From Octopus bimaculoides (Eukaryota), in the NCBI RefSeq assembly GCF_001194135.2, contig NC_068985.1, positions 112,251,041 through 112,314,949 on the forward strand: a stretch of DNA of 63,909 bases, read 5' to 3'. Both the position numbers and the translations under genes were made by a program. Shown one piece after another: positions 16,127-50,174 of the stretch (position 1 is its first letter; the number at the start of each line of letters is the position of its first letter). The notes under the pieces were generated by a model, which saw only the letters and a program-made list of their open reading frames with translations, searched no databases and was not told the DNA's origin.

Positions 16127-16194
16127 CTGACAAGGCACATTTCCTGTACAAGATGGTGGGGAGGAGATATGGTTTGTGTCGATGAATACATTAT
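16127..16194 (-). CDS. Caskin: Caskin linker exon (68 nt, phase 1 to phase 0): (D)NVFIDTNHISSPPSCTGNVPCQ
   Basis: ttattattattttttgttttag|AT AAT GTA ... TGT CAG|gtgagt. Consensus acceptor and donor, open in the phase left by the 210-nt exon. Confidence 0.7.
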
Positions 16195-23562: not shown

Positions 23563-23772
23563 CATGTGACTGATTGGATGTCATGGCGCTGGGTGATGGT
23601 GGGGGTGGAGGAAAGGGATACGTATCATCACTTCCACTCCCATCTGATGTGGTTCGTTTTGTGGTCCCGTAAGCCAAACTGTTGCGATTGAGAAGATCAG
23701 GCACTTGAATGCCGGTAGCAGGAACCAGCGGGGGAGTCTTGGTGTTGATATGATTGTGTGATGACGAGTGAG
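23563..23772 (-). CDS. Caskin: Caskin linker exon (210 nt, phase 1-1), Ser/Thr/Pro-rich with an FPPPPP motif
   Basis: ttatctcatttccttgcag|CT CAC TCG ... CAT G|gtaagt; exactly 70 codons, open: HSSSHNHINTKTPPLVPATGIQVPDLLNRNSLAYGTTKRTTSDGSGSDDTYPFPPPPPSPSAMTSNQSH. Phase matches the SH3 exon. Assignment to Caskin is by position, strand and phase. Confidence 0.8.
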
Positions 23773-24038
23773 CTGCAAGGAAATGAGATAAGATTGCAAT
23801 AAGAAAGAGAGACAGACGAGGAGAAAGATGACAGACCAAACGAAACAAAAAAAATAAATAAATAAATAATGAAAAATAAACAATAAAATAATAGAAATGT
23901 GGGTGGTTACTATAGATACAAGTGTGTCTGGATGCAGGGCAGAATGACAGCTGGGACACAAGCTAAAGAATTTAGAGTTTGGTGGTGCTTTATCAGTTTC
24001 GCGTGAGTATATGTTTTATATATACATATATACATATA

Positions 24039-24069
<31 letters not shown>

Positions 24070-24257
24070 ACATGCATACATATATATACATACACACACA
24101 TGTATACACACAAACATGTATATACATACATATATATACACAAGCACACAGACATATACAAACACACACATTTACATATATATACACACACACATATATA
24201 TGGACTGTGTGCGCCTGTGTGTGTGAGTGTATATATAGACATGTGTGTATGTATGTA

Positions 24258-24300
<43 letters not shown>

Positions 24301-25569
24301 TTGTATAATATGTTATTTTAAAGCTAAATATACTGTCCAAACATGACTACCATGATGTGGTTGGATGGTTGGATGTATTCCTCTTGGTGCACTGAGCTAC
24401 CAGTTATCAGTGGCTGTGCAAAATCTACCCCTGCACCCACACATCACTGCAGAGAGGGGGCGCTTGCCCTCCCCCCCAACACTGTTATCAATACTATATT
24501 GACATCTCTAACACTGCCAAATCACCATACCACCACCACCACCACCAACATCATCACATCTACTACCATGTGTTTAGCATGTTTCCTTGTTCACCTGAGG
24601 TCAATGACCCAGATATGAAAGGATGTTGTGATGGACACAGACACACACAAAAATAACCAAAGATATTTTATTTATTTACTCATTTATTTGTTTTATTTTG
24701 CACTGCTTTTTCCAAAGTGCATATGAGGATTTGAACCAAGTGCTTTGAGATACTAAAATACTGATGGATTACATATTGCCCTTGTTCGTAACTGCAAGGT
24801 AAAACTGCACCATCTTATGATAACACATCTACGGTTAGGACACTACACAGAACTAGTGGTCTAGTGACTTTTAGGTAGAGGGTGAAAATCTTAATTGGGT
24901 TAGGATTGAGTAGATACTGACAGCAGAGAGATGCATTATAAGACACTTTCTTGAGACAAACACTGCAGCTTTTCTGGCTTTTTACACTATATCTACATAG
25001 AAATATACAGAATGCTATTTTGAATTAATATTGTCTCCATTACTAATACCAATTTGCGACACCAGTAATTTGTTAATCACTGTTTTTCTATATCAGTAGA
25101 AGCTAAAATTGTCTAAGTGATTGATAGTGGATACTTGCAACTGATGATGTGCAAAGACGCAGCTGGATGCTATTCATCTGCTACCGATATATTTTTTGTG
25201 CTTTTTAGCACTATACGTCTATAAAAGATACTTTCTCTGGCTTTCTACAGTATATCTACATTAAATAAAATATACAGAACGCTATTTTGAACTACCACTA
25301 CTTCCATCCTTAATAATGAATTAATATAGATGACATAATTATAGTTAACTGCTTTTCAACTCTGGGTTTATGCCAGGAATCTCAGTTTGCAGAGCTGGCA
25401 TATCCTTGAGCAAACTGTTCTGGCTTCTAAAGTGCACTAAAGTAGAAAGCAGGCAATCATTTTATGACTGGTTGGTTGACAACTTCAGCTTACAGTTGTA
25501 ACCCGACATTTTTCATACTTTGGCTAACTTTTAAATTCAATATTGCTATCACTCATAGATATGCTTATA

Positions 25570-25735
25570 AAATATTTTTAAAATACGGTGCAGCATCCAT
25601 GACTTTTGGAAACATTTTTTCACTCAGAATTTTCAAAGCATGGAATAAACTATCTGCATCAGTTATTGGCAGTCAGAACACCACATCTTTCAAGATTTCT
25701 ATGCTCCTTGAAATTTACCAGCGCTACCCCTGATG
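25570..25735 (+). mobile_element. CR1-like LINE 3' end remnant
   Basis: NIFSLRIFKAWNKLSASVIGSQNTTSFK resembles the CR1 C-terminal FFSNRVV..WN.LP..VV...S...FK motif. Confidence 0.55.
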
Positions 25736-27236
25736 TGCCTTTCCTCTTTATGGATATCTTTCACTTTTCATTTATCCTTTACTTGTTTCAGTCATTTGAC
25801 TGTGGCCATGCTGGGGCACCACCTTGAAGAATTTTTAGTCAAATACATTGATCCCAGTATTTCTTTTTTTAAAGCCTGGAACTTATTCTATTGGTCTCTT
25901 TTGCCAAACCATTAAGCTACAGGGATGTAGGCACAGACACAAAGACATATACACACACACACACAGAGGCATGATGGGCTTCTTTCAGTTTCTGTCTACC
26001 AAATCCAATCACAAAGCTTTGGTTGGCCCAAGGCTATTATAATAGAAGACATTTTTTCAAGGTGCCCTGCAGTGAGACTGAACCTGGAACCATGTGGTTG
26101 AGAAGCTAGTTTCTTTTGCATTTCATTCTTTGTACTATACTTTTGCCTAGCATTACTGTCTTTCTTTAATGACTACTGCTGCCTTCTGCCCCATTTTTCA
26201 CCCTTTGGCAACAAGTTGTAATGAAACTGAGCACTGTATACAATAAGCTTATTATTATCATCTAGCGCTTGCAAGCCAACTGTATTAATGATCAGACAAC
26301 GTAGCTATTTGCAAGTCTTCTTTCAATGTATGACAGTCGTAGTATCATGACAATGGTTGTTGTTGCAGAATGTGCTACTGTGCTTAACTTATGACTATAT
26401 ATAAACAGACAAACATTATGCCATTTCTTTCTAGATTTCTATACAAACTACACTTTCAGCATGACTTAATTCTTGCTGGCAATGGTGCTGCATAAAAAAG
26501 CACCCAAGCCACTCTGTAAAGTGGTTGGCATTAGGAAGGGCATCCAGCTGTAAAAACCATGCCAAAATAGACCTCACTGGGGCTGGTGCCACATAAAAAG
26601 CATCCAGTCCAGTCCAGTCTGTAAGGTGGTTGGTATCAAGAAAGGCATCCAGCCATAAAAATCAGGCCAAAACAGACAGTGATGCCTGGTGCAGTCTTTT
26701 GGATTGCCAGCTCCTATTGAACTATCCAACCCATGCCAGCATGGAAAACAGGGATGATGATGATGAAGACTGTGAATTATGAGTTCAAAACAAATTGGAA
26801 CAAGATTATATTATCATATAGCAAAAACCAGAATTATTATAATTATTATAAATACAATTTAGTGTATTTGGAGAATGCACAGTGCTCACCTAGCGTGTGT
26901 CTGTGCGTGCGTGTACACACAGACACACAATATGTGTCACTAGTTGTATAACCTGTCCTGCTAGCATTACATGACTAATAAATGTTCTTGTCAAGATAAA
27001 ACAGCAGAGTTAAAATAGCAGAAACAAATTTCATTCATTCGAATTTAATAATTTTTTTTTTTTTTACATCTGTTTTTCTATGCTAGCATGTGTTGGATAA
27101 ATATACCATTGAAGCATCGTTTTACACCCAGATGCCCTTCTTCTCTCTATCCATTACCTGTTTTGCAAGGGGTCTCTTCACTCACATGTCTCTGAAGGCA
27201 TGAAAAAGGAAGACGATTTACTCTTTTTTTTTTTAT

Positions 27237-27626
27237 TACTCTTTTGCTTGTTTCAGTCATTTGACTGCAGCCATGCTGGAGCACCGCCTTTTAGTCGAGC
27301 ATATCAACCCCGGGACTTATTCTTTGTAAGCCTAGTACTTATTCTATCGGTCTCTTTTGCTGAACCGCTAAGTGACAGGGACATAAACACACCAGCATCG
27401 GTTGTCAAGCAATGCTAGGGGGACAAACACAGACACACAAACACACACACATATACATATATACGACGGGCTTCATTCAGTTTCTGTCTACCAAATCCAC
27501 TCACAAGGCTTTGGTCAGCCCGAGGCTATAGTAGAAGACACTTGCCCAAGATGCCACGCAGCGGGACTGAACCCGGAACCATGTGGTTGGTAAGCAAGCT
27601 GCTTACCACACAGCCACTCCTGCACC
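27237..27626 (-). mobile_element. SINE family A, full length
   Basis: Near-identical to 20501-20893. Confidence 0.85.
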
Positions 27627-28518
27627 TAGAGAGTAATAACAACAAAACTGCTAGTAAGGAACAACTTTCAGAGCACAAATGTAAACAAACACAAACATGT
27701 ACACACACACACGCTTGTGCATATGCACATTTAGGGTAAATGCTTGTATTCTGAGGGTGCTGCTGCACTCTGAATGCATGAGTTGATGTCTCATCAGGTG
27801 GTGAAGCAGCCCTGTAGGTGTTTCGGCCCCTTTCACCATGACACCAGAACTGCTCAGGGACAGACACCAATGCAAGCAACAGCACAACATGCAACTCATG
27901 CACAACAGTACAAGTTTTGTTGGGTCAGACATTGGGACTCTGAGCCAAATGTTTCCACCCACCTCAATGCTTTTTCTTGTGCTACCACTCATCCTCTCTT
28001 GAGCCAGATGTAATGGCTTGCTTTCTTAGAGACCCCTGATAATTTTCTTGGAGCATCATTCCTCCCCTTCACAGCTAGTCCAAGACTTTTGAACTTCAAG
28101 TGAATCCTTGTTCCAACAAATCCTTTAACACTTATCATTACATAACGGAATATTGCCTCCCATCCATTGTTTTTATTTTTCTACCAAAGTACCAAATTCA
28201 CTCACAAGGCTTTGATCAGCTCCTTGCGAAAGACATCATTCATTGGGGATTGAACTCATAATCTTATGATCGTGAAGAGTACTTCTCAACCACCCAAGCA
28301 TGCTTGTACTGATTATAGTGTCTAATTTGCGAAGATAAACAATGGCAAACATTCTGCAGTATAAATCGCAGCGCAGTTGTCCGACAAATGATAGATATAC
28401 GATTACAGTCTCTCTGTCTGTAAGACTGTTGCTCTTTATGTTTTCATTGCACATTGGTTCTTATAATAATATACACATACAGTAGTCTTTTCAACTTGCA
28501 TACGCTTTGCAAATAGAT

Positions 28519-28524
28519 TTTATT
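28519..28524 (-). promoter_or_regulatory. Candidate polyadenylation signal (AATAAA) for the alternative terminal exon
   Basis: Plus-strand tttatt reads AATAAA on the gene strand, downstream of the stop at 28733. Confidence 0.35.
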
Positions 28525-28732
28525 AAAACAAAGCCAATAAGAAACATATATTACACATTTAATCTATTACATTTAGTCATGTTTTACAAACAGTGCATTC
28601 ATGCAGAAGTCTCTCTCTCTCTCTCTCCACGCCACCAGCTGCACAATACTGCATAGTAGAGCAACGGCAGCACCAGCATCTAATCACAGCTGCCACTTAA
28701 AGACGGCATCTCGTTAATTAAGCAAAGATGGA

Positions 28733-28794
28733 TTAACAATAATGTTCAAACATCTCCAATCTCTCTCTCATCTCCTTTGAATCAATGCAATTTC
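28733..28794 (-). CDS. Caskin: Coding part of a candidate alternative terminal exon of Caskin: (x)GA-NCIDSKEMRERLEMFEHYC*
   Basis: Very strong acceptor ccccttctttttcttctgcttttcag|GA AAT TGC ... TAT TGT TAA in phase 1. Followed by non-repetitive UTR-like sequence and AATAAA about 210 nt after the stop; no strong donor seen. Confidence 0.5.
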
Positions 28795-29214
28795 CTGAAA
28801 AGCAGAAGAAAAAGAAGGGGGAAAAAACAACAACAACAAAAAGTACTACACCAGCATCATTGAATATTCTGATGACACTATGGGGTGGGTTTTGGGTGGG
28901 GAATGATGTTGGTAGTGGTGGTGGGGGTGGAAAGTGGGGAGGAAAAGTTAAAGAGGTAAAAACAAATAATGAATGAAACCCCACCAAAAAAATAATTAAA
29001 AAAAGGAATAAAAGGCAGAGAAGAAAATAAAAAAAAAAATTCCTGAGAAATAAGAAAAAAAGAAAACAAAGAAATGTAGAAAAAGAAAAAGCAAAGATAA
29101 GTAGAATAGAGAAGTATGAGAAGTGTTGTAGAATGAAGGGATATAAGGAGTCTGAGGATTAGGAGAATAGCGAAATGAGGAATAAGAGATTAGTAAAGTA
29201 TGAGGAGCTGAATA

Positions 29215-30060
29215 GGGAAGTATGAGGAGGAGGAGGAGTAGAGTACAAGACTAAGAAGGGAGTAGTAGAGTACAAGGCAGAAGTGCAGAAGCAGAACACA
29301 AGAGTGTGATGAGGAGTAGAGTACGAGGATGAGGAGGAGGAGGATAAGGAGGAGGAGGGGGGAGACTAAGAAGGGAGTAGTAGAGTACAAGGCTAAGAAG
29401 GGAGTAGTAGAGTACAAGGAAGAGGAGTAAAGTACAAGACTAAGAAGGGAGTAGTAGAGTACAAGGCTGAAGTGCAGTAGCAGAACACAAGAGTATGATG
29501 AGGAGTAGAGTACAAAGAAGTGGAGTACAAGGCTAAGAAGGGAGTAGTAGAGTACAAGGAAGAGGAGTAAAGTACAAGACTAAGAAGGGAGTAGTAGAGT
29601 ACAAGGCTGAAATGCAGTAGCAGAACACAAGAGTGTGATGAGTAGTAGAGTACAAGGAGGAGGAGAAGGAGTAGTACAAGACTATGAAGAGTAATAATAA
29701 AGTACAAGCCTAGGAAGAAGAGGAGAGTAGAGTACAGGCCTATGAGGAAGAGGAGTAGAGTATAATACTATGAAGAGGAGAAGAAAAGTATAAGATTGAA
29801 AAATGGTAGTAGAATACAAGAGTTAGGAGGAGAATACATGACAGTGAGTTGTAGTAGAGTACGAGACTGGGGAGAAGTAGAGCACAAGACTTTTTGAAAA
29901 GTACCTGTAGAGTATAAAAGTATGATGAGGAGAATATAGAACTGTGAGGTGTCATAGGAGTATGAGACAATGGAGAGTAATTGTAGAGTACAAAAGTATT
30001 TGAAGAGGAGTAACAGAGTACAAGACTATAAGGAGTGGTATTAAAATACAAGAGTACTTG
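29215..30060. repeat. Purine-rich minisatellite built on gagtagtagagtacaag with a 140-bp higher-order repeat
   Basis: taagaagggagtagtagagtacaaggctga..tgcagtagcagaacacaagag recurs at 29441 and 29581; degenerate flanks. Confidence 0.85.
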
Positions 30061-32645
30061 AACAGTGGTAGAATAGAGAAGCATTAGGTGTTGATGAGAG
30101 AAAATGTTAAAATCAGATGGCAGACAGCAGAGAAGAGGAGGAAGTAAAAGAAAAAAATACATTCAACAGGAAAAAAGGAAGAACTGTAAGAACGGAAAGA
30201 TGAGTTCTTAGCTAATGAATTGACAATATTTATAGTGAAATAATTAACTTAATGAGTCTTATGTTTTATGTTTTGTTTAGCTGAATTAACTGTCCTGTTG
30301 CATGAAACAAGAATGGTCTGTATTTGTTTCATTAATTTTACAAATTGCTAATTGAAGGCACTCCTATACTGACCATCCCTCCTGTAAAGTAGAAGTACAA
30401 TATTCGCAAGCCGTGATTGGTCAGGACTGAAAAGTTCTTCTCAATGTCACAAACCTGGGTAAGGCTTTTTTTTTTTCAGGGTTAACTTCTAGTTGTCTTT
30501 GTGGGTCTCCTCTATCCATTCCAATGATGTTTTCCGAGAGAAAAGACTTACATAGCTCAGTGCCAGTTTTGCCATAGGTGAATAAATGAATATAAAAACC
30601 ACTGCCATTGTTTTAAAGTCTACTTTTCCGTGCTTGCATGCATGAGTCAGATTGAATTTGTCGAGGTGGATATTCTACAGCCAGATGCTCTTCCTGTCAC
30701 CAACTCTCACCTGTTTCTAAGTAAGATGGTATTTCCCCTTGGCAGGATATGCTTTCACATAGAATTGGAAATGAAGCGTAACACTTGCACGATGAAGATG
30801 CTTGCTTACAACCATCACACGACGTCGAGGAAAGGAGAGAGTAACACACACATGATGGTTTTCTTTTAGTTTCTTCATCACTTAACTTCTACCTTCCATA
30901 CTGGCGTAGGTTGGATGGTTTGATAGGAGCCAGCCAAGCAGGAGCCCGCACCAGACTTCTGTGTCTGTTTTGGCAGGGTTTTACAGCTGGATGCCCTTCC
31001 TAACACCAACCACCCAGCAAAGTTTCCATCTACCAAATTCACCTACAAAGTTTCATTCAGCCTGAGGCTATAGTAGAAGATACTTTTCAATATGCCATGC
31101 AGTTGGGATTGAACCCAAAATTACATGGTTAGGAAGCAAGCTTCTCAACTCCACAACCTCAACTGCCCCTATTGTCTCATCATCTATATGTATTATGTCC
31201 ATACCAGCAGAGCCATTGCTCTTGTATGCAACACTTGATTCCTCTTAAACCCTGATCTCTGATCTCAGTGTTCACACACAGCAACATTACATATCCAGCT
31301 AATCACGCTCACTTTGTTTCTTTCCAACCTTCATACACACACACACACACACACACACACATTCTCCGCAATTTCTAACAGGTCAAGCAAAGACATAGAG
31401 ACTCCTTTGTTACAGATCACCCAAACATCTTTGGTATACCAGCAAGCTTGTGTATTAGTATTTAACAGCAAAATTAACTACAGATAGCAATGAGAACTAA
31501 CTGGAGTCAAATACATCAGTTAGAAAACATCAAAATTACATTTATACAGTCAAGGAGATCAAAGCTAAACAAGGTCATCCATCAGAACAGAACAAATACG
31601 TACATGTTTATCAGAATTGATCAAATGTAGGCATATTTATTGGAACTGAAATACACATACATTCATCAGAACTGGATAAATATACACACATCCATTAGAA
31701 CTAAACAAATATATACAGTAACCACAATTAAACATGGATATACACCATTAACAACAGCAGCATTACTGGTGATAACTGCATAATGCTATATAAAGCTGTG
31801 ATGAGGAATGTTAGAGCAACACTGACTGTGAACCTGAGGTGAGGGTTGTTATGCTAAGAATTGGTTTGTATATCGGCACAAGAAAAGAGAAATCTCTTTA
31901 TCTCTTGTACTTGTTTCAGTCATTACATAGCGGCCATGTTGGGGCACCACCTTAAATTTTTAGTTAAATCAACTGACCCCAGTACATTTTTATTATTTAT
32001 TTTTTTTAAGCCTGGTGCTTATTCTATAAGATTCTTTTGTCAAACCACTAGCTTACGGGGACACAAACCCCTTGTCAAGTGATGGTGAGGGTCAAATACA
32101 GACACATATATCTGATGGGCTTCTTTCAGTTTCTGTTTACCAAATCTACTCACAAAACTTTGGTTGACCCAAGGCTATAATAGAAGACTTTGCCCAAGGT
32201 GCCATAATGTGGGACCGAACCCAGAACCATGTGGTTCGGAAGCAAGCTTCTTACCAAATATATTTTCCATTGGACACAACAACATGCCCTGTCTATTGAC
32301 CATTGTGGTTAGTGCAGAGAAGGGACATGCTCTTTGTGCCTTGTCTCCATGTATTTTGTGATGCTGCTGCTGATGATGATGATGTTATTGATAGTAAGCA
32401 TTAGTGTGGTGTTAAATATCAAAGGTTAAAATCATGATTGCCGCGCTGTGGTATTAGCATTAAAAGGCACTTCTGATGTTGATGGAAGACAAACAACCAT
32501 CTATGCAATAAACAGTTCTTCGCATCGATATAGACACACCATACATAACATACACACACAAGTATACATGGGGTCATGTGCATTTACAAACAAACAAAAC
32601 CACATCTATGTTAAAAAATAAACATATCTCCATACATAGATGCAT

Positions 32646-32705
<60 letters not shown>

Positions 32706-33984
32706 AAATCACATCTATATTAAAAAATAAAAATATCTGCACACACACACACACACACACACAAGATGCATAAATAAAGCAGGTAACCTTTAACAAATGT
32801 ATTTCTGACACTTTGGAATGAATGTCTGCATAACAGCGCTGGTCACTAATAGAAACCTGCCAACTACATACATACACAAATACATACATATATATTTATA
32901 TATATATATATACATAGGTAAAAAGTAAAAGTGAAAATAGTACGGAAGTATGTTTAAAGATGCTTTTATTTATTTTTTTTTCTTTAATCAGACAGAAGTA
33001 TTTTTATGTGTTACATTAAATGACTTTTATAAAATATTAGCAGTTCCGATGTGTATGTTCATCTTATCAATTATTAAAAAATTCAAAGTGAGGAATTAGG
33101 AAATAGGAATTAAAAATGAGAAATTAAAACAGTTTTTTCTCATATTTTGTGCATAGTTAAGAGCATGTATGTTGTTACTAGACCCAACTCCTTGTAGAAC
33201 AAATATTGCCAAGCGTAATACTCAAATTACAGAGCAGAAGGCAAGCCACTGGATTTGGTTATAAAGAGATGATGAGCAATGTCTCAAAGAATATTGAGTG
33301 AAACCTAACAACCAATTGATCTAGCAAGTGGGGCCTCATTTCAGCGAGGTGAGGGCTGATGTACAATGATGCCATCAAGGGGAATACCCTGAAATGGTGT
33401 GCATTCTCTCCTGATACCCCATAAGCTTGCTAGCGTCCGATGCAGAGCTTTCAACTGGTAGCACTTGCATCTGCAAGTTGTTTGTAAAATCTCTCTTTCC
33501 CTCTATGTGTGTATGTGTGTATGTGTGTGTGTATTTATTATTTGATAGACACAATACATGTCTTTATGTGCTACTAATAGTTTCTTGTGCTGAGAACATG
33601 CTAAATAATGAATTAGAGTATGTGTAACAACTCTGCACAAGTCATCAGGTACAAGCCATAGCATAAACTAAAAATTGAGTCTGCTTTCCATGCTGGCATA
33701 AGTTGGTCAGTTTGACAGGGGCCAGTCAGGTAGAAGACTACTCCAGGCTACTGTCTGTTCTGGTATAGTTTTTACAACTGGATGCCTTCCTAACATGAAC
33801 CACCCTGCAGAGTGGACTGAACACAAGCAAAGTCAGTTTTGGTATGGTTTTTACAGATGGATGACCTTCCAAATACCAAACACTTCACAGTGCGGACAGG
33901 ATGCTTTTAACGTGGTACCAGTGCTGGCAAGGTTACCAAGTAACTTGCAGGACAAAGAATTTTAAGAGGGAAGGAGGCATTGGA

Positions 33985-34445
33985 GGAGGTGATGCATGTA
34001 TGCATATATGTTTGAATGCATGTCATTGTTCAGTTTTATTTCAAGATCTCTTGCCAATAGAGAAAGAGTCGGTTTCTAGCCTAGATCCAAGGTTCCATCA
34101 TTGGAATTTCAACATCAACAACAGGTCATTTTTGTTTGTATTTATGTATGTATGTATGTATATATATATGTGAAGATTCTTATGGTTTGCTTTATTGAGA
34201 GAAACCTAGAAACCAATTGATCTAGTGTATAGTCATGCGAATACATATATATATGCGAATACTATGTATTCGCACGCATATAGTTGCATATCTAGACATG
34301 CTCATATATATATTCAAATGATAAACTTCTGGAAAGTATTACAGGTTTTAGCAGTTCTAGTGATGGATTGAATCTGTAGTTTTCGAATTAGCTTTCTCCC
34401 TTCTAGTTTTGAGAAGTCTAATTTCTCAAGTTTGGTATTTGTGTT
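33985..34445 (-). mobile_element. 3' end of a non-LTR element (R4/Dong-like C-terminus plus 3' UTR)
   Basis: Reads LEKLDFSKLEGRKLIRKLQIQSITRTAKTCNTFQKFII*; a second copy lies in opposite orientation at 50175-50480. Clade assignment is from memory. Confidence 0.5.
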
Positions 34446-35434
34446 ATGTGTGTATATATAGGCTTTTAGTATTGCAAACTGCAAGGCAGCCTAACATGCA
34501 GTGACGTGTTCGGTGATAGGAAAGGCATCCAGCAGACATTGGAGAATGATGCAGTCCAGTGAATCTGCTAGAACCTCTCAAAACCGTCTAACGTAAACCA
34601 TCCTAGAAAATGGACATTAAAAGACGACGGTGATGATGATTCCAGTTGATGAAACATCTGGAATACTCGTCATTGAGGCTGTGTCACATGATACATGTAC
34701 ATATTGGTGTGCATGTGTGAAAATATAAGTGTGCGTGTGTGTGTACATATATGAAGTACACATATGCACAGACACTAAACGGTTTACACATCACCTTTGC
34801 TGTGATCAACCCCTTCTTGTATTATAACCAACAGATCTTCCTTTTCCGGTGAAACTGTTTATTTCAAACAAGAGTCTGTTAGTGCATTAGCTGCTGCACC
34901 ATCTGTTACTTGACATAATTACCTTCTTTTTTTTTCCTTTTTTTTTTGTTACCTAGTATTCAGGTCACTTAGTACAACTTATCAGTATATAATAATATAT
35001 TCTATGTCATTAGATAAACTCTCACAACACTGATGCGGAACCATAACCACCACCACCACCACCACCACCATCGCTGCCATCTCACCAGAAAGTAAAAATG
35101 AAAACACGTTTTCATATAACTGCCATTATCCAATGAAAACTATTTGTCCTGCATAGCATCTGTTATAGTTAAAACTGCATAAAAACTATGGAAGCCACTC
35201 TGTGCTAGCACCCTTAAAATTCCAGTTCAAAGTACATCAGTGACAATGTGTGTATTTGTATATTTATGATTTGTGTCTAAAAGAGGTAAAGGAGTATGTC
35301 TAGTTAGGTTACACAGTGAATATGTACCAAGACAATTGACAAGTCCCTTAACTCCTTGGGGGGCCATTGGGATGCTGCAGCCATGCAGCATGTCTAGGGT
35401 AAGAAAGCCTGGTGGAGCCCATCTCTCTCCAGGC

Positions 35435-35990
35435 TAAACTGGACTGGAGTAACGCAAAATGAAGTGTTTTGCTCAAGAACACAACAGATCACCTTGTCCG
35501 GGGATTGAAACCACAATCTTATGGTCGTGAATCCAACACCCTAACCACTATGCAATTAGTGGTACTCACTTCTACAGCTGAGTGGACTGGAGCAACGCAA
35601 AATGAAGTGTTTTGCTCAAGAACACAACAGATCACCTTGTCCAGGGATTGAAACCACAATCTTATGGTCGTGAATCCAACACCCTAACCACTAAGCAACT
35701 AGTGGTACTCGTTTCTACAGCTGAGTGGACTGGAGCAATGTGAAGTGAAGTGTTTTGCTCAAGAACACAATGTATCGCCTGGTCCAGGAATTGAAACCAC
35801 AATCTTATGGGCGTGAATCCAACACCTTAACCTCTAAGCAACTAGCGGTACTCATTTCTACAGCTGAGCAGACTGGAGCAACGTGAAGTGAAGTGTTTTG
35901 CTCAAGAACACAGCAGATCACCTTGTCCAGGAATTGAAACCACAATCTTACGATTGTGAGTTCAACACTTAAAACCACAAAGTCACGTGC
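35435..35990 (-). repeat. Head-to-tail array of four 143-bp units, each a family-D SINE head plus core
   Basis: (g/a)gactggag starts at 35441, 35584, 35727 and 35870. Confidence 0.9.
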
Positions 35991-36094
35991 CTCCACATGC
36001 ACCAAGACAGGGACAGTAAAATACTGATGAGAATAAGGGCAGGATGGAAGAGGTTTATCTCAATAAAGGACGTGATTAAAGTAGAGCCGGACAA

Positions 36095-36435
36095 GTCCAT
36101 GCATTGCCAGATTCTTTGATAGCGCCATCCTGCTAGAATTCTTACATGCAAGTGAGATGAGGGCTACTATGAAGAGAGAACACAACTTGTTACAATGCCG
36201 AGGGCCATGGAAAGATCCATGTTAGAGATATCATTGTGAAAGCAAATCTAAAACGAGAATATTTGACAATAGAACAAGAGAATGATGGGAATTGTAGAAT
36301 ACTGGAAGCACAAGTTCTGCTGGGTCAGACATGGCGCAAGGTTCACAAACAATAGGTGGACCCAAGCAGTTACTAGGTGGTATCCAAGAGACCAAAAAAA
36401 AGGGCTACTTGGAAGGCCTCCACAATGATAGCATA
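36095..36435 (+). mobile_element. Degraded RTE-type LINE RT C-terminal remnant (second lineage)
   Basis: Translates with stops as FDSAILLEFLHASE...RAMERSMLEISL*...KFCWVRHGARFTNNRWTQAVTRWYPRDQKKGLLGRPP, resembling the RTE C-terminal pattern WAGHVAR..RWT...WYPR....GRP. Confidence 0.75.
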
Positions 36436-36607
36436 AAATGTGCAGAGATATATTAGACATATCCTAATTTCAGTGGAGTGTATTCAGGAGAAGTGATTTT
36501 AGTGCATTAATGTATGTACCATAGGCCTAACTTCTCATAGGGTCAGGGTTGATTTTTATGAGACATTTTTTGGGGGTAGGGCAGGTGTCTTATATGCCAT
36601 CAAGTAT

Positions 36608-36695
<88 letters not shown>

Positions 36696-36696
<1 letters not shown>

Positions 36697-36901
36697 GTGT
36701 CCATAAATTATCTTTACAATTCAAAAAATTCAGAAAAAATAAAAAATAAGGATAACTCAGCAGAGTTTATTGGGAAACATAGGCAAACAAAGTTTTATTA
36801 GAAACATCAAAACACTTTTATAAATTCTGCTGAGTTATCCTGATTCTTAATTTTTTTTTTCAAAAATTTTCCGATGGTAAAGGTAATTTAAGGACACCCT
36901 G
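36696..36901. mobile_element. Tc1/mariner-type MITE with long imperfect TIRs
   Basis: ggtgtccataaattatctttac...ggataactcagcaga pairs with tctgctgagttatcc...gtaaaggtaatttaaggacaccctg. Confidence 0.75.
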
Positions 36902-37264
36902 TGTGTGTATATGCATATATGAAAATGAGATGAGAAAGGAATGAAATTTGTTATCTCGTTTTCTTTCTTATTATCGCTCTATACCCAGCTGATGCTTCAT
37001 TCTGAAGAATATGTATATTGGGTTATTATTACCTGGTTATTAGTCTCGCAATGCCTAAGAGAAATATTAAAATAGTTAAATGCAAATGCCCCCATCATTT
37101 GACATTGAAAAAATATGCACATGCACACGACAGAAAGACAAGCAGATAGACTAAAGTTTGTCAAGAAAAAAGCATAGTGGGAGAGAGAGAGATGTCTCAT
37201 AGATTAGTTAAGATTTTAAAGAAATAAAGTCAAACAGAAAGTACAGTGAGTCTGTGAGTGTGTG

Positions 37265-37432
37265 TATGAGGGAATTGCTGAAAAGTTCATGGGTTTAAGG
37301 ATATTTCTAAAAGCCTGGGTGGAGGCCCAAACTTATGAGTTCTTTTACAGTGCTTCGAAAAACTGAAGGGCTGCTGCAATAAGTGTGTGAATCCAAGTGG
37401 GGAATATGTTCAAAGAAATCATAATTAACTGA
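37265..37432 (+). mobile_element. Mariner-derived short element (transposase C-terminal remnant); inverted copy at about 61670-61825
   Basis: gaggg..ttgctgaaaagttc end, and KLKGCCNKCVNPSGEYVQ resembling the mariner C-terminal KCV...GEYVE motif. Two copies in the window. Confidence 0.6.
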
Positions 37433-39972
37433 TCCTCTTGCATTTTCTTTTACACGATGGGCGCAGGAGTGGCTGTGTGGTAAGTAGCTTGCTTACCAAC
37501 CACATGGTTCTGGGTTCAGTCCCACTGTGTGGCACCCTGGGCAAGTGTCTTCAACTATAGCCTCGGGCCGACCAAAGTCTTGTGAGTGGATTTGGTAGAC
37601 GGAAACTGAAAGAAGCCCGTCGTATATTTATATATATATATATNNNNNNNNNNNNNNNNNNNNNNNNNNNNNNNNNNNNNNNNNNNNNNNNNNNNNNNNN
37701 NNNNNNNNNNNNNNNNNNNNNNNNNNNNNNNNNNNNNNNNNNNNNNNNNNNNNNNNNNNNNNNNNNNNNNNNNNNNNNNNNNNNNNNNNNNNNNNNNNNN
37801 NNNNNNNNNNNNNNNNNNNNNNNNNNNNNNNNNNNNNNNNNNNNNNNNNNNNNNNNNNNNNNNNNNNNNNNNNNNNNNNNNNNNNNNNNNNNNNNNNNNN
37901 NNNNNNNNNNNNNNNNNNNNNNNNNNNNNNNNNNNNNNNNNNNNNNNNNNNNNNNNNNNNNNNNNNNNNNNNNNNNNNNNNNNNNNNNNNNNNNNNNNNN
38001 NNNNNNNNNNNNNNNNNNNNNNNNNNNNNNNNNNNNNNNNNNNNNNNNNNNNNNNNNNNNNNNNNNNNNNNNNNNNNNNNNNNNNNNNNNNNNNNNNNNN
38101 NNNNNNNNNNNNNNNNNNNNNNNNNNNNNNNNNNNNNNNNNNNNNNNNNNNNNNNNNNNNNNNNNNNNNNNNNNNNNNNNNNNNNNNNNNNNNNNNNNNN
38201 NNNNNNNNNNNNNNNNNNNNNNNNNNNNNNNNNNNNNNNNNNNNNNNNNNNNNNNNNNNNNNNNNNNNNNNNNNNNNNNNNNNNNNNNNNNNNNNNNNNN
38301 NNNNNNNNNNNNNNNNNNNNNNNNNNNNNNNNNNNNNNNNNNNNNNNNNNNNNNNNNNNNNNNNNNNNNNNNNNNNNNNNNNNNNNNNNNNNNNNNNNNN
38401 NNNNNNNNNNNNNNNNNNNNNNNNNNNNNNNNNNNNNNNNNNNNNNNNNNNNNNNNNNNNNNNNNNNNNNNNNNNNNNNNNNNNNNNNNNNNNNNNNNNN
38501 NNNNNNNNNNNNNNGTACAGAATTGTGGGCTTGTGTGTAAGTAATATCAGCTACCCTAAATTTAATACCCATGGTAGCAGTGGTATTGGAGTTGGTGGGT
38601 GTTCTCCACCAGCACCAGTCTTGTTTACACTATCGTTTTAATCTTGGTAGATATCACACGCACACAGCTATATATACAAGCTCCCATACACACTGATGAA
38701 CAGGCACACATACATGTGTATGTATATGTATGTGTATGCATGTATGTATGTATATATATATATACACACACAAGCACACAAACACATATATATACACATG
38801 CATACATATAAACAGGAACACATAGGTATGTATGAATGTGTGTGTGCATACACACATACATATATATCAACACACACAAACATATACACAGATACATATA
38901 GATATATAAATACATACATATACATATATACATGCACACACATGAATATTCAGACAGCCACTAAACACACACATGCAGACATACCTACATACATACATAT
39001 ATACACTCATGTATTCCTACAACTCCCCTGGAAACAGACATAAACACACACATATTCGACCCAGTATAAATAAACACATACGCATACATCTACTACACAT
39101 CACATATCCACATACATTTCAGGTAGTAGGCACACAAACACACATATACAGAAACATACCTCACCACACACATACGGTGCATACATAGTAGATATACAGA
39201 GGGGAGGGGTGATGTAGAGAGGTAATATAATGAAGTCACTAAATATAGGTGTGTAGTGAGATATTTAGAGGGTATGTAGGTGTGGTGGTAGTGACAAAGT
39301 AGTATTAATGGTATAAGTAGTGGTAGTGGTGGTATTATATATATATNNNNNNNNNNATATATATATATATATATATATATATATCTATGTGATATGTGTT
39401 TGTGTCTGAGTTTTTCTCTTCATCACTGCTTGACAAGTGTTGGTATGTTTACATCCCTGTAATTTAGTGGTTTGACAAAAGAGACCAATAAAATAAGTAC
39501 TGAGGTTCATCTGATGATCAGAGCAATGGGGACCCCCATCATCATCGTAACCGATGGAGTGCCAGTTAAGTTAATTAAGGTTAGGACAGGATGGTCATAA
39601 TTAGAATGCTTTTAGATGATATGCATATATGGTACAGGATGTCACCAACTGTGCAATCAACATGAAATACATAAACAATGACAGGAAAAAAATGGGAAAC
39701 TAGACTAGTAAACAGAGAAACAACCCTTCATCAGTTGTCGGCTGTCTATTTACTGTTCATTTTGAGCATTCAATGATAATATGAGTCTTCAAAGACAATT
39801 GCTCCCATAAATTCTAAAATAAAACTTAGGATTTATAGATGGGTCAAAGTTGGGATCAAAACAGGACAGTGGAGACATAAAAGGAAACTAAACGAAAACA
39901 AACATGGAAGGTCGTTAGACCAGAACGAGAGGAAAATAATGAATGCTGGGAGAAATATTTTCTTTGAAAAGA

Positions 39973-40041
<69 letters not shown>

Positions 40042-40044
40042 TAG

Positions 40045-40076
<32 letters not shown>

Positions 40077-40158
40077 GGGGGGCATAAGTCGCTTTACCCA
40101 TTTCTAATAAAGAAATGGGTAAAGAGACTTACAGCCATCTCTGTATATATGTCTGGGT

Positions 40159-40226
<68 letters not shown>

Positions 40227-40951
40227 ACAGGCGTTTTCAGTTTCTGTCTACCAAATCCACTCAGAAGGCTTTGGTCAGCCCAAGGCTATAGTAGAAGACA
40301 CTTGCCCAAGGTGCCATGCAGTGGGACTGAACCCAGAACCATGTGCTTGGAAAAGCCAGCTTCTTACCACACAGTCATTGCCTGCTCGTGGAATTAATGT
40401 GCAAGTGACCAAACACTCCATAGACATGCATACCCTTAACATAGTTCTCAGAGAGATTCAACATGACACAAAATGTGATATGGCTGACCTTCTGAGATAC
40501 AACGTGAAAAAAAGTGTCTTAGGTCAAGGACACAATGAACCCCCAGGAATCAAACTTATGACCTAATTACCATGAGTTGAATACCCTAACCACATAGCCA
40601 CATGCCTTCGCCATAACTTTAATTAAAGACATTATTCAACATGCCTTCCTTTGTCAAACATAGTGATGTTTCATTTGAGGGAGATTAGGCTACCATTTCT
40701 AGCAGGTCAGGGGATTATGTAGAGGTTCTTTAACAATAGTGGTATAGGTGTCAGTAGCAATCACAGTGCAGTGTTGTTTAGGCTTAGATTTATGCTGACC
40801 AAACGAACCTATGACCAAAGACATCCCCCCACCCACTACAATACTGTCTGTTTTCAGTCACTGTGCAACCTCAGGCTGCATATATTTTAATGTAGTTAAT
40901 TCTTCAATGGAAAAAAAAAAAAAAAAAAGCAAAAACAAAAAAAAAAACGTT

Positions 40952-41341
40952 ATAGGCTTAGGAGTGGCTGTGTGGTGAGTAGTTTGCTTACCAACCACAT
41001 GGTTCCAGTTTCAGTCCCACTGCATGGCACCTTGGGCAAGTGTCTTCTATTATAGCCTCAGGCTGACCAAAGCCTTGTGAGTAGATTTGGTAGACGGAAA
41101 CTGAAAAGAAGCCCACCATATATATGTATATGTGTGTATATGTTTGTCCCCCCCCCCCCAACATCGCTTGACAACCGATGCTGGTGTGTTTATGTCCCTG
41201 TAACTTAGCGGTTCGGCAGAAAGAGACCGATAGAATAAGTACTAGGCTTACAAAAAGAATAAGTCCTGGGGTCGATTTGCTTGACTAAAGGCGGTGCTCC
41301 AGCATGGCCACAGTCAAATGACTGAAACAAGTAAAAGAGTG
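40952..41341 (+). mobile_element. SINE family A, full length
   Basis: ggagtggctgtgtggtgagtagtttgc ... gactgaaacaagtaaaagagt. Confidence 0.85.
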
Positions 41342-41478
41342 TAGTTTTTTTGAGAGAGATTTGACTAGTCTTTCTAGCATGTTGAATGACCACATAATGG
41401 CTTCCTCATTCACTAAGTTGAGGTAGTAGCAGAAGAGGTTTTGAACACTCATTCTTGTCTGACATTTATGTGTGTGCT

Positions 41479-41523
<45 letters not shown>

Positions 41524-42480
41524 TTGGATTGTACCCCTGAGAAATAATGCTTCACCAGCTAGCCAGAAAACCACCCACCCATCCACATGCAGTAGTATCC
41601 TCAATATCTTCCTGTTCTCTAACAAGATCTGCTGCCCTGCCCTGCCCTACCCCTACCCCTATCAGGACTGACAGGAAGCTTAAAAAGCTAATCTGTGCAC
41701 TGACCCACAACTGAACAAGAACCTGTCATCAGCTAACTTTAAAGATAATGAAGTGATAATGAAGAGACACTGCTGAGACATCTATTCAGCAATATCAGTC
41801 ATCACTCACCCTCACCTCATAAATCTTTGATCACCAGCCAATGTCCTATATGTAAGAAACTAACCAACTAGTGGGGGTTGGTCTGTTGGAGGGCCAGCCC
41901 CTCGATGTTAAATAACAACAACAAGGGCAAATTCTGTTTCATCACCAGCTACATTTGGTATTTATCTATACCAGTGCTTTCCCTCCCATTATTCTCATCA
42001 TCGTCGTTGTCATCATCACCCACATCATCGTCATCACTATCATCTTCATCGTCATTGTCATCATCATCTTCACCACCACCACTACCATCATCATCATCAT
42101 CAAAGCACCACACAGAAACCAGCAGGAGACTCTGACACAAGTAGAACAGCTAAACAAACATAATATTGTGTTGAATAACAGTGGATATATTTATAAAGAT
42201 ATAAAAAAAAGAAAAGAAAAATACCCAGCAAAGTGAATTATCTTAGAAATACAATACCAAATAGGGATCTTCAAACTGGCATTGAGCTCTTTGAATTCTT
42301 AGATATTGAAACAGCGGCAAGTAAGTTGAAAAGGCACAGCGCCAGATTAAAACTGTTATTGAGTTTCGTATTGCTTATCAGCACCAGTTTCAAGTTGAGT
42401 AGAAGAGAATCAATCCCAATATTATTTAAGCCAACAATTAACTCCCCAACCACCAACCCTACTATTACGCAAACCCCAAA

Positions 42481-42600
42481 CTGAATCAAGCTCCAACTTC
42501 AATATTATTAAAATTCTGAACTGAATCAAGCTCCAACTTCAATATTATTAAAATTCTGAACTGAATCAAGCTCAAACCCTAATATTATAGAAACTCCTAA
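42481..42600. repeat. 40-bp tandem repeat (about 3 units) with degenerate continuation to about 42760
   Basis: ctgaatcaagctccaacttcaatattattaaaattctgaa at 42481 and 42521, partial at 42561. Confidence 0.9.
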
Positions 42601-43235
42601 TGTAATGAAGCCCCCAACATCAATGATATTCAAACCCTGAACTTAATTAAGTTCAAGTCCTGATATTATAAAAAAACCCTAAAAAAATCAGCCCGCAATC
42701 CTAATATTATATAAACTCCAACTCATCATCCAAAATATACAAACCCACAATTAACACAACTCCTAATATTTATTTCTTTATTGCCCACAAGGGGCTAAAC
42801 ATAGAGGGGACAAACAAGGACAGACAAAGGGATTAAGTTGATTACATTGATCCCAGTGCATAACTGGTACTTATTTAATCGACCCCCGAAAGGATGAAAG
42901 CCAAAGTCGACCTCGGTGAAATTTGAACTCAGAACGTTTCGTTCAGCATGCTAACGAATCTGCCAGCGCGCCGCCTTAACAACTAATATTACATACAACA
43001 ATGTCAATGGATAGATAGATAGATAAATTAAAATCCATTATTACACAACTACACAATTCAGTCATCGAACTGCGGCCATACTGGGGGCATTCAGCCATAG
43101 ACAATCTGCCTTGATGAATTCTGCTCAACCCATGCAAGCAAGGAAAAGTGGACATTAAAATGATGATAATAATGATGATAGTATGTGTTCAGTGTTGGTC
43201 AGAGCAGGGATGACAAAGTACTCTGTCAAATTTAC

Positions 43236-43256
43236 CGTTCCTCATAAACCGCAGAC
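43236..43256 (-). CDS. Caskin: Candidate 21-nt phase 1-1 micro-exon of Caskin, peptide (G/C)LRFMRN(G/A)
   Basis: aatttaatttgtaagcctcttTGCtccatcag|GT CTG CGG TTT ATG AGG AAC G|gtaaat. Open in phase 1, symmetric, UGC at -11. Confidence 0.4.
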
Positions 43257-43571
43257 CTGATGGAGCAAAGAGGCTTACAAATTAAATTCTTCCTACACTA
43301 TCAGTCAATGGAAGAACCCATCTCAACCGTTTGCTCTCTGTCATGGAATTTTCATAGACTATACAAAGATGGTTTACTGTTGTCTTTGTTTGGAAATTTA
43401 TAGGAAACCTTATCTTATTAGCTAGTTAGAAATAAATTCAACACAGGTGCCTGGGTACAGACAACTTGGCTGGAATAAATACATCATTGTAACAGCAAAA
43501 GGAACCAACAGAGCAGGTACAAGACTTAAAAAAAAAAAAATATTGGGATTGTTTTGTTCAAGGTAATGCCC

Positions 43572-43847
43572 CAGCATACTCTTTTATTCTTTTACTTGTT
43601 TCAGTCATTTGACTGCAGCCATGCTGGAGCACCGCCTTTAGTCGAGAAAATCGACCCCAGGACTTATTCTATCGGTCTCTTTTTGCCGAACCGCTAAGTT
43701 ATGGGTACGTAAACACACCAGCATCAGTTGTCAAGCAATGGTGGGGGGACAAACATATATATATATGACGGGCTTCTTTCAGTTTCCGTCTATCAAATCC
43801 ACTCACAAGGCTTTGGTCGGTCCAAGGCTACAGTAGAAGACACTTGC
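43572..43847 (-). mobile_element. SINE family A (5' part lost in a gap)
   Basis: Reverse complement of the 40952-41341 copy. Confidence 0.8.
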
Positions 43848-44912: not shown

Positions 44913-44999
44913 TTTAGATGTCTTTAAAACAAGCTTGTATCATAGAACCAAGGGTGGTCTCAAACAAGTTGGTATCAAAATGGTTAATATTTGGAAAGT

Positions 45000-47126: not shown

Positions 47127-47164
<38 letters not shown>

Positions 47165-47167
<3 letters not shown>

Positions 47168-50115: not shown

Positions 50116-50148
<33 letters not shown>

Positions 50149-50174
50149 TATGCATACAGAATGGCGAAAGAAGA

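What the first reader, a model, noticed from the sequence alone, without database searches (positions are those of the whole stretch)
28490..28830. Intronic alternative last exon predicting an ankyrin+SH3-only Caskin lacking SAM domains
One of the strongest acceptors in the window, followed by a short in-phase ORF, non-repetitive UTR-like sequence (with a UGCAUG at 28600-28605) and AATAAA. Established: Caskin architecture is ankyrin repeats, SH3, tandem SAM, then a Pro-rich tail, and the SAM domains mediate polymerisation and partner binding. Inference: intronic polyadenylation here would yield a short isoform that could act as a competitor of the full-length scaffold.
Basis: partly seen in the sequence, partly recalled or inferred. 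Interest (0 to 1): 0.7.

Follow-up and report, generated by a model that had tools for sequence, protein, structure and literature searches.

The report
Unproven intronic end-exon in octopus Caskin
Inside a 29-kb intron of an octopus Caskin scaffold gene lies a stretch that looks like an alternative final exon, which would cut the protein off right after its SH3 domain. No annotation or transcript record I could reach shows it being used, so it is most likely an unused look-alike.

Summary
The window holds three exons of an Octopus caskin gene on the minus strand: 53067-52956 (second half of the SH3 domain), 23772-23563 and 16194-16127. The finding sits in the 29,183-base phase-1 intron after the SH3 exon.

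There is a long pyrimidine tract ending in AG at 28796-28795, TGCATG at 28605-28600 and AATAAA at 28524-28519. I also found ATTAAA at 28563-28558, three UGUA motifs, a GU-rich downstream element, and no usable donor for 589 bases.

There is no "short in-phase ORF". The T left by the SH3 exon plus GA makes TGA at the junction, so the product would be a 361-aa (or 348-aa) ankyrin+SH3 protein ending VVLVDSQ.

- **For:** the acceptor ranks 2nd of 3050 AGs by a crude score, and the poly(A) context is in the top few percent.
- **Against:** the acceptor is the edge of a 1.4-kb pyrimidine-rich repeat block, the hexamers occur at background frequency, and no cephalopod annotation or transcript assembly I could query holds such an isoform.

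Conservation and expression could not be tested. Best reading: an unused or noise-level decoy terminal exon (0.55). A real intronic-polyadenylation isoform is at about 0.27.

The parts
52956..53067 (-). Constitutive Caskin exon coding the second half of the SH3 domain (VLEQKADGIWKGCVIHNDRMSKPGYFPADHVVLVDSQ plus 1 nt, T). It is 112 nt long, enters in phase 0 and leaves in phase 1, with donor AAT|gtgagt.
   Evidence: tblastn to mollusc and Argonauta/Octopus caskins; the spliced translation equals O. bimaculoides P0267. Top acceptor score in the window.
23773..52955 (-). Phase-1 intron of 29,183 bases between the SH3 exon and the linker exon. It contains the candidate.
29228..29784 (.). Tandem repeats (periods 47 and 140, among others), purine-rich on the + strand and so pyrimidine-rich on the gene strand. 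They form part of a roughly 1.4-kb pyrimidine-rich block (about 28795-30160) whose 3' edge is the candidate acceptor.
   Evidence: TRF; GC and AT skew in 28001-30000; four of the eleven best acceptor scores lie between 29042 and 29767.
28795..28845 (-). Candidate 3' splice site: a 49-base pyrimidine tract (tactttttgttgttgttgttttttcccccttctttttcttctgcttttc) followed by AG at 28796-28795.
   Evidence: Crude PWM rank 2 of 3050. Shuffle controls reach this score in 8% (local block) and 2% (whole intron) of runs.
28505..28794 (-). Candidate terminal exon, which would be entirely 3'UTR. GA at 28794-28793 completes TGA with the T at 52956. It starts GA-rich (28775-28751) and has no second copy in the window.
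   Evidence: translation ...VVLVDSQ*; self-BLAST; no donor scoring 3 or more until 28206.
28600..28605 (-). TGCATG hexamer (Rbfox-type motif). There are 40 such hexamers on this strand of the window.
28558..28563 (-). ATTAAA variant poly(A) hexamer with U/GU-rich sequence downstream.
28519..28524 (-). AATAAA poly(A) hexamer. Three UGUA motifs lie upstream (28588, 28571, 28555), TTTGCAAAG lies at 28513-28505, and GU-rich TGTATGTGTAT lies at 28481-28471.
   Evidence: The context is among the best 8 of 206 hexamers for UGUA count.
28190..28330 (-). Copy of a dispersed SINE-like repeat downstream of the candidate. It carries the first decent donor (CTT|gtgagt, exon end at 28206).
   Evidence: matches at 20762, 27489, 40249, 41092 and elsewhere. 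The 28330 limit comes from reading the sequence; the BLAST matches cover 28190-28276.
23563..23772 (-). Next constitutive exon (linker: S-HSSSHNHINTKTPPLVPATGIQVPDLLNRNSL...SNQSH), 210 nt.
16127..16194 (-). Following constitutive exon (DNVFIDTNHISSPPSCTGNVPCQ), 68 nt, donor CAG|gtgagt.

Best explanation
The stretch is ordinary intronic sequence of an Octopus caskin gene that happens to look like a terminal exon. A very pyrimidine-rich, partly tandem-repeated block about 1.4 kb long ends in an AG, which creates a strong-looking 3' splice site. About 230-270 bases downstream, the AT-rich unique sequence contains two poly(A) hexamers with GU-rich sequence after them. If the spliceosome ever joins the SH3 exon to it, the junction makes a TGA and the transcript would end near 28545-28495. 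That would give a 361-aa ankyrin+SH3 protein, but I expect this to be absent or at noise level rather than a regulated isoform.

Shown: the gene identity, the exon phases, the motifs and their background frequencies, and the absence of any such isoform in the records I could reach. Inferred: that the site is not used.
For: - Gene and phase.
- The acceptor is the edge of a pyrimidine-rich repeat block: strand skew, tandem repeats, and four of the eleven best acceptor scores lying at 29042-29767 inside that block.
- A second acceptor in the block, at 29042, also gives TGA. This shows such look-alikes come in series here.
- Local shuffles reach the observed score in 8% of runs.
- AATAAA occurs 1.08 times per kb and TGCATG 0.67 times per kb. 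Thirty of 94 minus-strand hexamers have a GU-rich downstream element, and there are ten composite acceptor+PAS sites on this strand.
- The gene strand as a whole is rich in decoy acceptors: 7 sites scoring 10 or more, against 0 on the other strand.
- No short isoform appears among the 9 members of the Octopus sinensis/vulgaris/bimaculoides/Argonauta cluster. The exact predicted products are absent from the collection, and no short cephalopod form turned up in the N-terminal search.
- No Rfam family matches.
Against: - The acceptor scores as well as the true exons and exceeds 98% of whole-intron shuffles.
- There is no donor for 589 bases, so the anatomy is specifically that of a terminal exon.
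- The AATAAA has an unusually good context: 3 UGUA motifs, a CA, and a GU-rich element.
- The exon starts GA-rich, like a splicing enhancer.
- SAM-less Caskin forms that end just after this same exon boundary exist in transcript assemblies and annotations of vertebrates, a starfish and a spider.
- The absence from annotation is a weak negative, because the one Logan member of the Octopus cluster covers only the C-terminal part of the protein.
Confidence: 0.55

Rival explanations
1. This is a real alternative terminal exon of the skipped-terminal-exon, intronic-polyadenylation type. The SH3 exon splices to 28794, TGA forms at the junction, and cleavage follows ATTAAA or AATAAA. The result is a roughly 40-kDa ankyrin+SH3 Caskin without the linker, SAM tandem, proline-rich region or tail. 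It could not polymerise or bind SAM partners, and it might titrate ligands of the ankyrin and SH3 domains.
For: - Acceptor rank 2 of 3050, exceeded in only 2% of whole-intron shuffles.
- No donor for 589 bases.
- Two poly(A) hexamers with GU-rich downstream sequence, plus 3 UGUA and a CA for the AATAAA.
- The predicted 3'UTR of about 250-290 nt is close to the 350-380 nt median reported for octopus (PMC9699675).
- The Pfam layout shows SH3 ending at residue 356 and SAM starting near 600, so the cut is clean.
- Truncated SAM-less Caskin entries exist in other phyla.
Against: - No such isoform appears in any cephalopod annotation or assembled transcript I could reach.
- All signals are individually common in this AT-rich, microsatellite-rich genome.
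- The acceptor is explained in part by the repeat block.
- No added peptide exists whose conservation could be tested, and no cross-species DNA was available.
- The competitor function is pure inference.
Confidence: 0.27
2. It is a long poison cassette exon running 28794-28206. It would use the donor carried by the downstream SINE-like repeat, put an immediate stop into the mRNA, and send the transcript to nonsense-mediated decay as a way of tuning Caskin dosage.
For: The junction stop codon. The only donor scoring 3 or more downstream is CTT|gtgagt at 28206.
Against: - A 589-nt internal exon containing two poly(A) hexamers is atypical.
- The donor is weaker than the true one (3.1 against 4.3) and is part of a dispersed repeat consensus.
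- There is no transcript evidence.
Confidence: 0.05
3. The unique 28330-28794 stretch belongs to something else, such as a degraded transposable element or an independent non-coding transcript. The splice-like and poly(A)-like motifs would then be leftovers of that element.
For: It is flanked by a tandem-repeat block and a SINE-like copy. The window is full of repeat fragments.
Against: There is no second copy in the window, no Rfam match, and no ORF of note on either strand. A 64-kb window cannot show genome-wide repetitiveness.
Confidence: 0.08

Closest known systems
SAM-less short Caskin entries in other animals. Logan transcript clusters: P0288 (421 aa, 21 member sequences), P0290 (376 aa, 9), P0298 (403 aa, 27), P0299 (363 aa, 6). 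RefSeq predictions: caskin-1-like isoforms X4/X5 of Salvelinus alpinus, X3 of Poecilia formosa, caskin-2-like of Patiria miniata (387 aa). Also caskin-2 of Nephila pilipes (362 aa).
   Same: They keep the ankyrin repeats and the SH3 domain (some also the CASK-interaction region) and lack the SAM tandem. Many stop a few residues after the same exon boundary at the end of SH3.
   Different: - Their tails mostly start with G, which looks like read-through of the donor into the intron. That points to intron retention or truncated gene models rather than a separate exon deep in the intron.
- None is from a cephalopod.
- I found no paper describing a function for them.
Truncated isoforms made by intronic polyadenylation in general, for example secreted versus membrane immunoglobulin heavy chain and soluble decoy receptor tyrosine kinases (from my own knowledge, not checked here).
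   Same: The proposed mechanism is the same: a 3' splice site plus a poly(A) site inside an intron competes with the downstream exon and gives a protein lacking C-terminal domains, possibly acting as a competitor.
   Different: In those cases usage is shown by 3'-end mapping and the isoform's function has been tested. Here only sequence signals exist.
Cephalopod Caskin isoforms actually seen in the collection. An ankyrin-less form starting MFRRKSKK... (P0275, P0279, P0280, P0284, P0048; cuttlefish-type, the cluster's one named member being Acanthosepion/Sepia pharaonis). Tail-less forms ending ...EDERK (P0273, P0274, P0283) or ...NEERKYFMSP (Octopus-type P0271).
   Same: They show that the cephalopod gene does make, or is assembled into, alternative first and last exons that remove whole domains.
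   Different: They remove the ankyrin repeats or the C-terminal tail, and all of them that cover the SAM region retain it. None ends after SH3.

Membership tests
Caskin (CASK-interacting scaffold) gene | N-terminal ankyrin repeats followed by one SH3 domain | tested here: met
   The window exon 53067-52956 is the second half of the SH3 domain, 73-92% identical to mollusc and cephalopod caskins. The three window exons spliced together are identical to the O. bimaculoides caskin-2 segment. Pfam on the O. sinensis orthologue finds Ank to about residue 294 and SH3_2 at 300-356. The ankyrin exons themselves lie outside the window.
Caskin (CASK-interacting scaffold) gene | Tandem SAM domains and a conserved C-terminal tail downstream of SH3 | tested here: met
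   Pfam on P0265 finds SAM_1/SAM_2 in two stretches (about 600-723) and Caskin-tail at 1325-1351, the latter below its cut-off. These exons are not in the window, so this was tested on the orthologous protein only.
Alternative terminal exon made by intronic polyadenylation | A consensus 3' splice site inside an intron, with no 5' splice site before the poly(A) signal | tested here: met
   Rank 2 of 3050 by a crude PWM. No donor scoring 3 or more for 589 bases. This is sequence resemblance only.
Alternative terminal exon made by intronic polyadenylation | A poly(A) signal with upstream and downstream auxiliary elements | tested here: met
   ATTAAA at 28563 and AATAAA at 28524, three UGUA motifs, a CA, and a GU-rich element at 28481-28471. 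The hexamers themselves occur at background frequency.
Alternative terminal exon made by intronic polyadenylation | Observed transcripts or annotated isoforms that end there | tested here: not met
   There is no short member in the Octopus/Argonauta cluster. The exact predicted products are absent. The N-terminal search found no short cephalopod form. This is a weak negative, because the one Logan member of the Octopus cluster covers only the C-terminal part.
Alternative terminal exon made by intronic polyadenylation | Poly(A) cleavage cluster, a coverage step, and junction reads | not testable with these tools
   No read-level octopus RNA data are reachable. The supplements of the FLAM-seq/Iso-Seq study do not mention caskin.
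Alternative terminal exon made by intronic polyadenylation | Conservation of the signals in related species above the intron background | not testable with these tools
   The Argonauta gene spans 335 kb and no DNA was returned. The metagenome scans found no octopus DNA, even for the SH3 exon. Look-ups of window ORFs found nothing.
Poison cassette exon | A 5' splice site within a normal exon length downstream of the acceptor | tested here: not met
   The first donor scoring 3 or more is 589 bases away, inside a SINE-like repeat.
Recursive splice site | An acceptor immediately followed by a donor consensus (AG|GTRAGT) | tested here: not met
   The sequence is cAG|GAAATT.

The most novel reading that the evidence does not exclude
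The site is a genuine, regulated intronic-polyadenylation exon that gives octopus neurons a 361-aa ankyrin+SH3 Caskin unable to polymerise. Together with the SAM-less forms that end at the same exon boundary in vertebrates, a starfish and a spider, it would point to an old and overlooked short Caskin isoform class that modulates the full-length scaffold.
Probability: 0.12. Interest if true: 0.45.

Novelty: not a real feature. Interest (0 to 1): 0.17.

Why it matters
If it were real, it would be one more case of a scaffold protein producing a domain-truncated variant by stopping transcription inside an intron. It would offer a handle on how Caskin assemblies at synapses are tuned in a large invertebrate brain. 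Even then it would be a new member of a well-known kind, not a new mechanism.

As things stand, the value of this check is mostly corrective. It fixes the exon phases, shows that the stop codon is created by the junction, and shows that each signal is common in this genome. It also identifies the public data that would settle the matter.

Tried and rejected
1. Regex search for ankyrin and SH3 motifs in six-frame translations found nothing. The ankyrin exons are outside the window.
2. The first protein search, with the two joined exons, returned only a 134-aa Biomphalaria fragment. Its ending ...DSKGK looks like donor read-through, so it is not an isoform.
3. The exhaustive representative search with that fragment gave mollusc caskins plus several 57-98-aa ORF-style calls spanning the exon and its flanking intron (P0072, P0079, P0090, P0151). 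I rejected these as isoform evidence.
4. Fetching the orthologous locus failed. The Argonauta hians gene spans 335 kb and no DNA was returned.
5. Exact look-up of the predicted 361-, 348- and 265-aa products found none in the collection.
6. Look-ups of window ORFs overlapping the candidate, tried in the hope of finding other octopus contigs, found nothing.
7. Metagenome scans for the acceptor region and, as a control, the SH3 exon were both empty. That collection therefore holds no octopus DNA and its negative says nothing.
8. Rfam matched no family anywhere in the window.
9. Literature searches found no paper linking Caskin with octopus and none describing a short ankyrin+SH3 Caskin isoform. 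The supplements of the octopus FLAM-seq/Iso-Seq paper do not mention caskin.
10. I considered and rejected a cassette (poison) exon because there is no nearby donor, and a recursive splice site because no GT follows the AG.
11. My acceptor and donor scores come from improvised matrices, not a trained model such as MaxEntScan. The ranks are indicative only.

Full report
**What is in the window.** The gene lies on the minus strand.
- 53067-52956 codes the second half of the SH3 domain: VLEQKADGIWKGCVIHNDRMSKPGYFPADHVVLVDSQ plus one extra base.
- 23772-23563 codes a linker: S-HSSSHNHINTKTPPLVPATGIQVPDLLNRNSL...SNQSH.
- 16194-16127 codes DNVFIDTNHISSPPSCTGNVPCQ.

Spliced together they reproduce the corresponding segment of Octopus bimaculoides caskin-2 (P0267, P0270) and O. 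sinensis caskin-1 isoform X2 (P0268) residue for residue. Pfam on the O. sinensis orthologue gives ankyrin repeats to about residue 294, SH3 at 300-356, two SAM stretches between about 600 and 723, and a weak Caskin-tail match at the C-terminus. That is the architecture described in the literature (PMC7830187; PMC4994250). The ankyrin, first-half SH3 and SAM exons are outside the window.

**The observation.** The finding lies in the 29,183-base intron between the SH3 exon and the linker exon. On the minus strand, a 49-base pyrimidine tract (28845-28797) ends in cAG at 28796-28795, and the sequence GAAATTGCATTG... starts at 28794. TGCATG is at 28605-28600 and AATAAA at 28524-28519, as stated.

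I found several further features:
- ATTAAA at 28563-28558.
- Three UGUA motifs at 28588, 28571 and 28555.
- TTTGCAAAG at 28513-28505.
- A GU-rich TGTATGTGTAT at 28481-28471.
- A GA-rich start at 28775-28751.
- No donor scoring 3 or more for 589 bases. The first is CTT|gtgagt at 28206, inside a dispersed SINE-like repeat.

The stretch 28330-28794 has no second copy in the window, and nothing in the window matches an Rfam family.

**Correction of the ORF.** The SH3 exon ends ...GAC AGT CAA T|gtgagt, and the constitutive partner begins CT CAC..., which gives TCT (Ser). The intron is therefore phase 1. Joined to 28794, the T plus GA reads TGA, so the translation is ...VVLVDSQ* with no added residue. 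The product would be 361 aa, or 348 aa without an N-terminal 13-residue insert that differs between O. sinensis isoforms. It would end just after the last SH3 strand, so it would indeed be ankyrin+SH3 only. A second strong acceptor 248 bases upstream, at 29042, also starts with GA and gives the same stop.

**Is it more than chance?**

The acceptor. With a crude acceptor matrix built from general knowledge, 28794 ranks 2nd of 3050 AGs on the gene strand. It sits just behind the true SH3 exon acceptor and ahead of the true acceptor at 23772, which ranks 12th. However, the site is the 3' edge of a pyrimidine-rich block about 1.4 kb long. Strand skew is marked in 28001-30000, and tandem repeats of 47 and 140 bases occupy 29228-29784. 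Four more of the eleven best scores fall inside that block. Dinucleotide shuffles reach the observed score in 8% of runs for the block and in 2% for the whole intron. Shuffling destroys the runs and microsatellites typical of this genome, so these figures flatter the site. The gene strand as a whole carries 7 acceptor-like sites scoring 10 or more, against 0 on the other strand. Only one of these is a known exon, so decoys are plentiful.

The other signals. AATAAA occurs 64 times (1.08 per kb) and TGCATG 40 times on this strand. Thirty of 94 hexamers have a GU-rich downstream element, and composites of an acceptor scoring 5 or more with such a poly(A) site occur ten times on the minus strand and four times on the plus strand. 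In favour of the site, the AATAAA context (3 UGUA) is among the best 8 of 206 hexamers, and the lack of any donor gives it the specific anatomy of a terminal exon. My rough post-hoc estimate is about 0.2 such top-tier combinations expected per window. That is suggestive, not significant.

**Search for the isoform.**
- The 90%-identity cluster holding the Argonauta hians protein also holds all the Octopus entries: O. sinensis X1-X3 (1340-1353 aa), O. vulgaris (1316 aa), two partial O. bimaculoides models (771 and 676 aa), a 558-aa C-terminal Logan transcript and a 53-aa fragment. None ends after SH3.
- Exact look-ups of the predicted 361-, 348- and 265-aa products found nothing among about 15 billion proteins.
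- A search with the Octopus N-terminal 361 residues returned many short Caskin entries, but the best was only 55-60% identical. There is therefore no separate short cephalopod cluster.

This negative is weak for transcripts, because the only Logan member of the Octopus cluster covers the C-terminal part of the protein. It is somewhat stronger for annotation: the three annotated Octopus genomes and the Argonauta annotation contribute no such isoform to the collection.

**Precedents elsewhere.** The same search showed that SAM-less Caskin entries are common in other animals:
- Logan transcript clusters with 6-27 member sequences (P0288, P0290, P0298, P0299).
- RefSeq predicted isoforms in Salvelinus alpinus and Poecilia formosa that keep the CASK-interaction region but no SAM.
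- A 387-aa Patiria miniata protein and a 362-aa Nephila pilipes protein.

Many stop a few residues after the same exon boundary, with unrelated tails that begin with G. That is what read-through of a G|GT donor gives. I take most of them to be intron retention or truncated models rather than dedicated exons. The idea of a short ankyrin+SH3 Caskin is thus not new to the databases, though I found no paper describing one. Cuttlefish-type transcripts show other domain-removing isoforms: an ankyrin-less form starting MFRRKSKK..., and tail-less forms ending ...EDERK. An Octopus-type transcript ends ...NEERKYFMSP.

**What could not be done.** Cross-species conservation of the intron and read-level expression are the decisive tests, and neither was reachable:
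- The Argonauta gene spans 335 kb and no DNA was returned.
- Window ORFs overlapping the site are not on record elsewhere.
- The metagenome collection holds no octopus DNA, even for the SH3 exon.
- The supplements of the octopus Iso-Seq/FLAM-seq study do not mention caskin.

**Verdict.** Whether the exon is used cannot be told from what is available.

I weigh two things against each other. On one side are the decoy-rich, pyrimidine-skewed sequence context, the background frequency of each signal, and the absence of any cephalopod record. On the other are the high acceptor rank, the clean terminal-exon anatomy and the good poly(A) context.

| Reading | Probability |
|---|---|
| Unused or noise-level look-alike | 0.55 |
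| Real intronic-polyadenylation isoform | 0.27 |
| Long poison exon using the SINE-borne donor | 0.05 |
| Leftover of another element or transcript | 0.08 |

Even if real, it would be a new member of a known kind. Interest is low.

Noticed in passing
window 61951-61990 (minus strand): The O. vulgaris caskin model (P0266) replaces the SH3 second-half exon with a 13-residue exon, VPLIVSIDITFDT. That sequence is in the window, right after an acceptor (ctag|GTACCACTT) that scores 8.65. At the position where the model's exon must end, the window reads CTGAGT rather than GTGAGT. The exon may therefore be species-specific or an annotation artefact. It would destroy the SH3 domain while keeping the reading phase.
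   Followed up: partly
window 29042 (minus strand): A second very strong acceptor-like site (score 10.95) lies 248 bases upstream of the candidate, inside the pyrimidine-rich block. It also starts with GA and would give the same junction stop codon.
   Followed up: partly
whole window, both strands: Acceptor-like sites scoring 10 or more number 7 on the gene strand and 0 on the opposite strand. GC and AT skew are positive on the + strand over most of the window, so the transcribed strand is pyrimidine-rich throughout.
   Followed up: partly
window 28190-28330, with similar pieces at 20762, 27489, 35500, 37567, 40249, 41062, 43791, 49374, 56618 and elsewhere: Many copies, in both orientations, of a SINE-like dispersed repeat. 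Conceptual translations such as ADQSLVSGFGRQKLKEA and GLVKPDG.TRLQSDLAEFLQLDALPNANHSESV recur throughout the window.
   Followed up: partly
window about 18500-19260 (minus strand): A fragment of a reverse-transcriptase ORF (SSGVPQGTVLGSLLFIIFITDI..., ...IFADDSKI...), presumably a LINE remnant inside the downstream intron. The acceptor-like site at 18770 lies inside it.
   Followed up: no
proteins P0275, P0279, P0280, P0284, P0048; P0273, P0274, P0283; P0271: Cuttlefish-type transcript assemblies show a Caskin form without ankyrin repeats (it starts MFRRKSKK... just before SH3), seen in several independent contigs. They also show forms with an alternative C-terminus (...EDERK) that lack the conserved tail. 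An Octopus-type transcript ends ...NEERKYFMSP.
   Followed up: partly
proteins P0001, P0072, P0079, P0090, P0151, P0294: Several database 'proteins' are just the SH3 exon read through into its flanking introns, with endings such as GK*, GEKIKN... and GQNKE*. This shows that the exon boundary VLEQ...VD(S/G)Q is conserved across molluscs, and that such entries should not be taken as isoforms.
   Followed up: partly
window 23760-23772; proteins P0264, P0265, P0268: O. sinensis isoforms X1 and X3 carry an extra HSSS at the start of the linker exon compared with X2 and with the window, which has a single CACTCGTCATCA unit. This could be a 12-base tandem copy or alternative acceptor use in O. sinensis.
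   Followed up: no
window 53269-53316 (minus strand): About 200 bases upstream of the SH3 exon, the same strand reads ILVLEQKANS in one frame, repeating the first six residues of the exon (VLEQKA). It could be a small partial duplication or chance.
   Followed up: no
window, 12 runs of N totalling 4627 bases (for example 1136-1973, 37644-38514, 58792-59430): Masked stretches or assembly gaps, often flanked by TA or TG microsatellites. Any exon or signal inside them is invisible, including possibly the first-half SH3 exon if it lies at 54226-54605 or 58792-59430.
   Followed up: no
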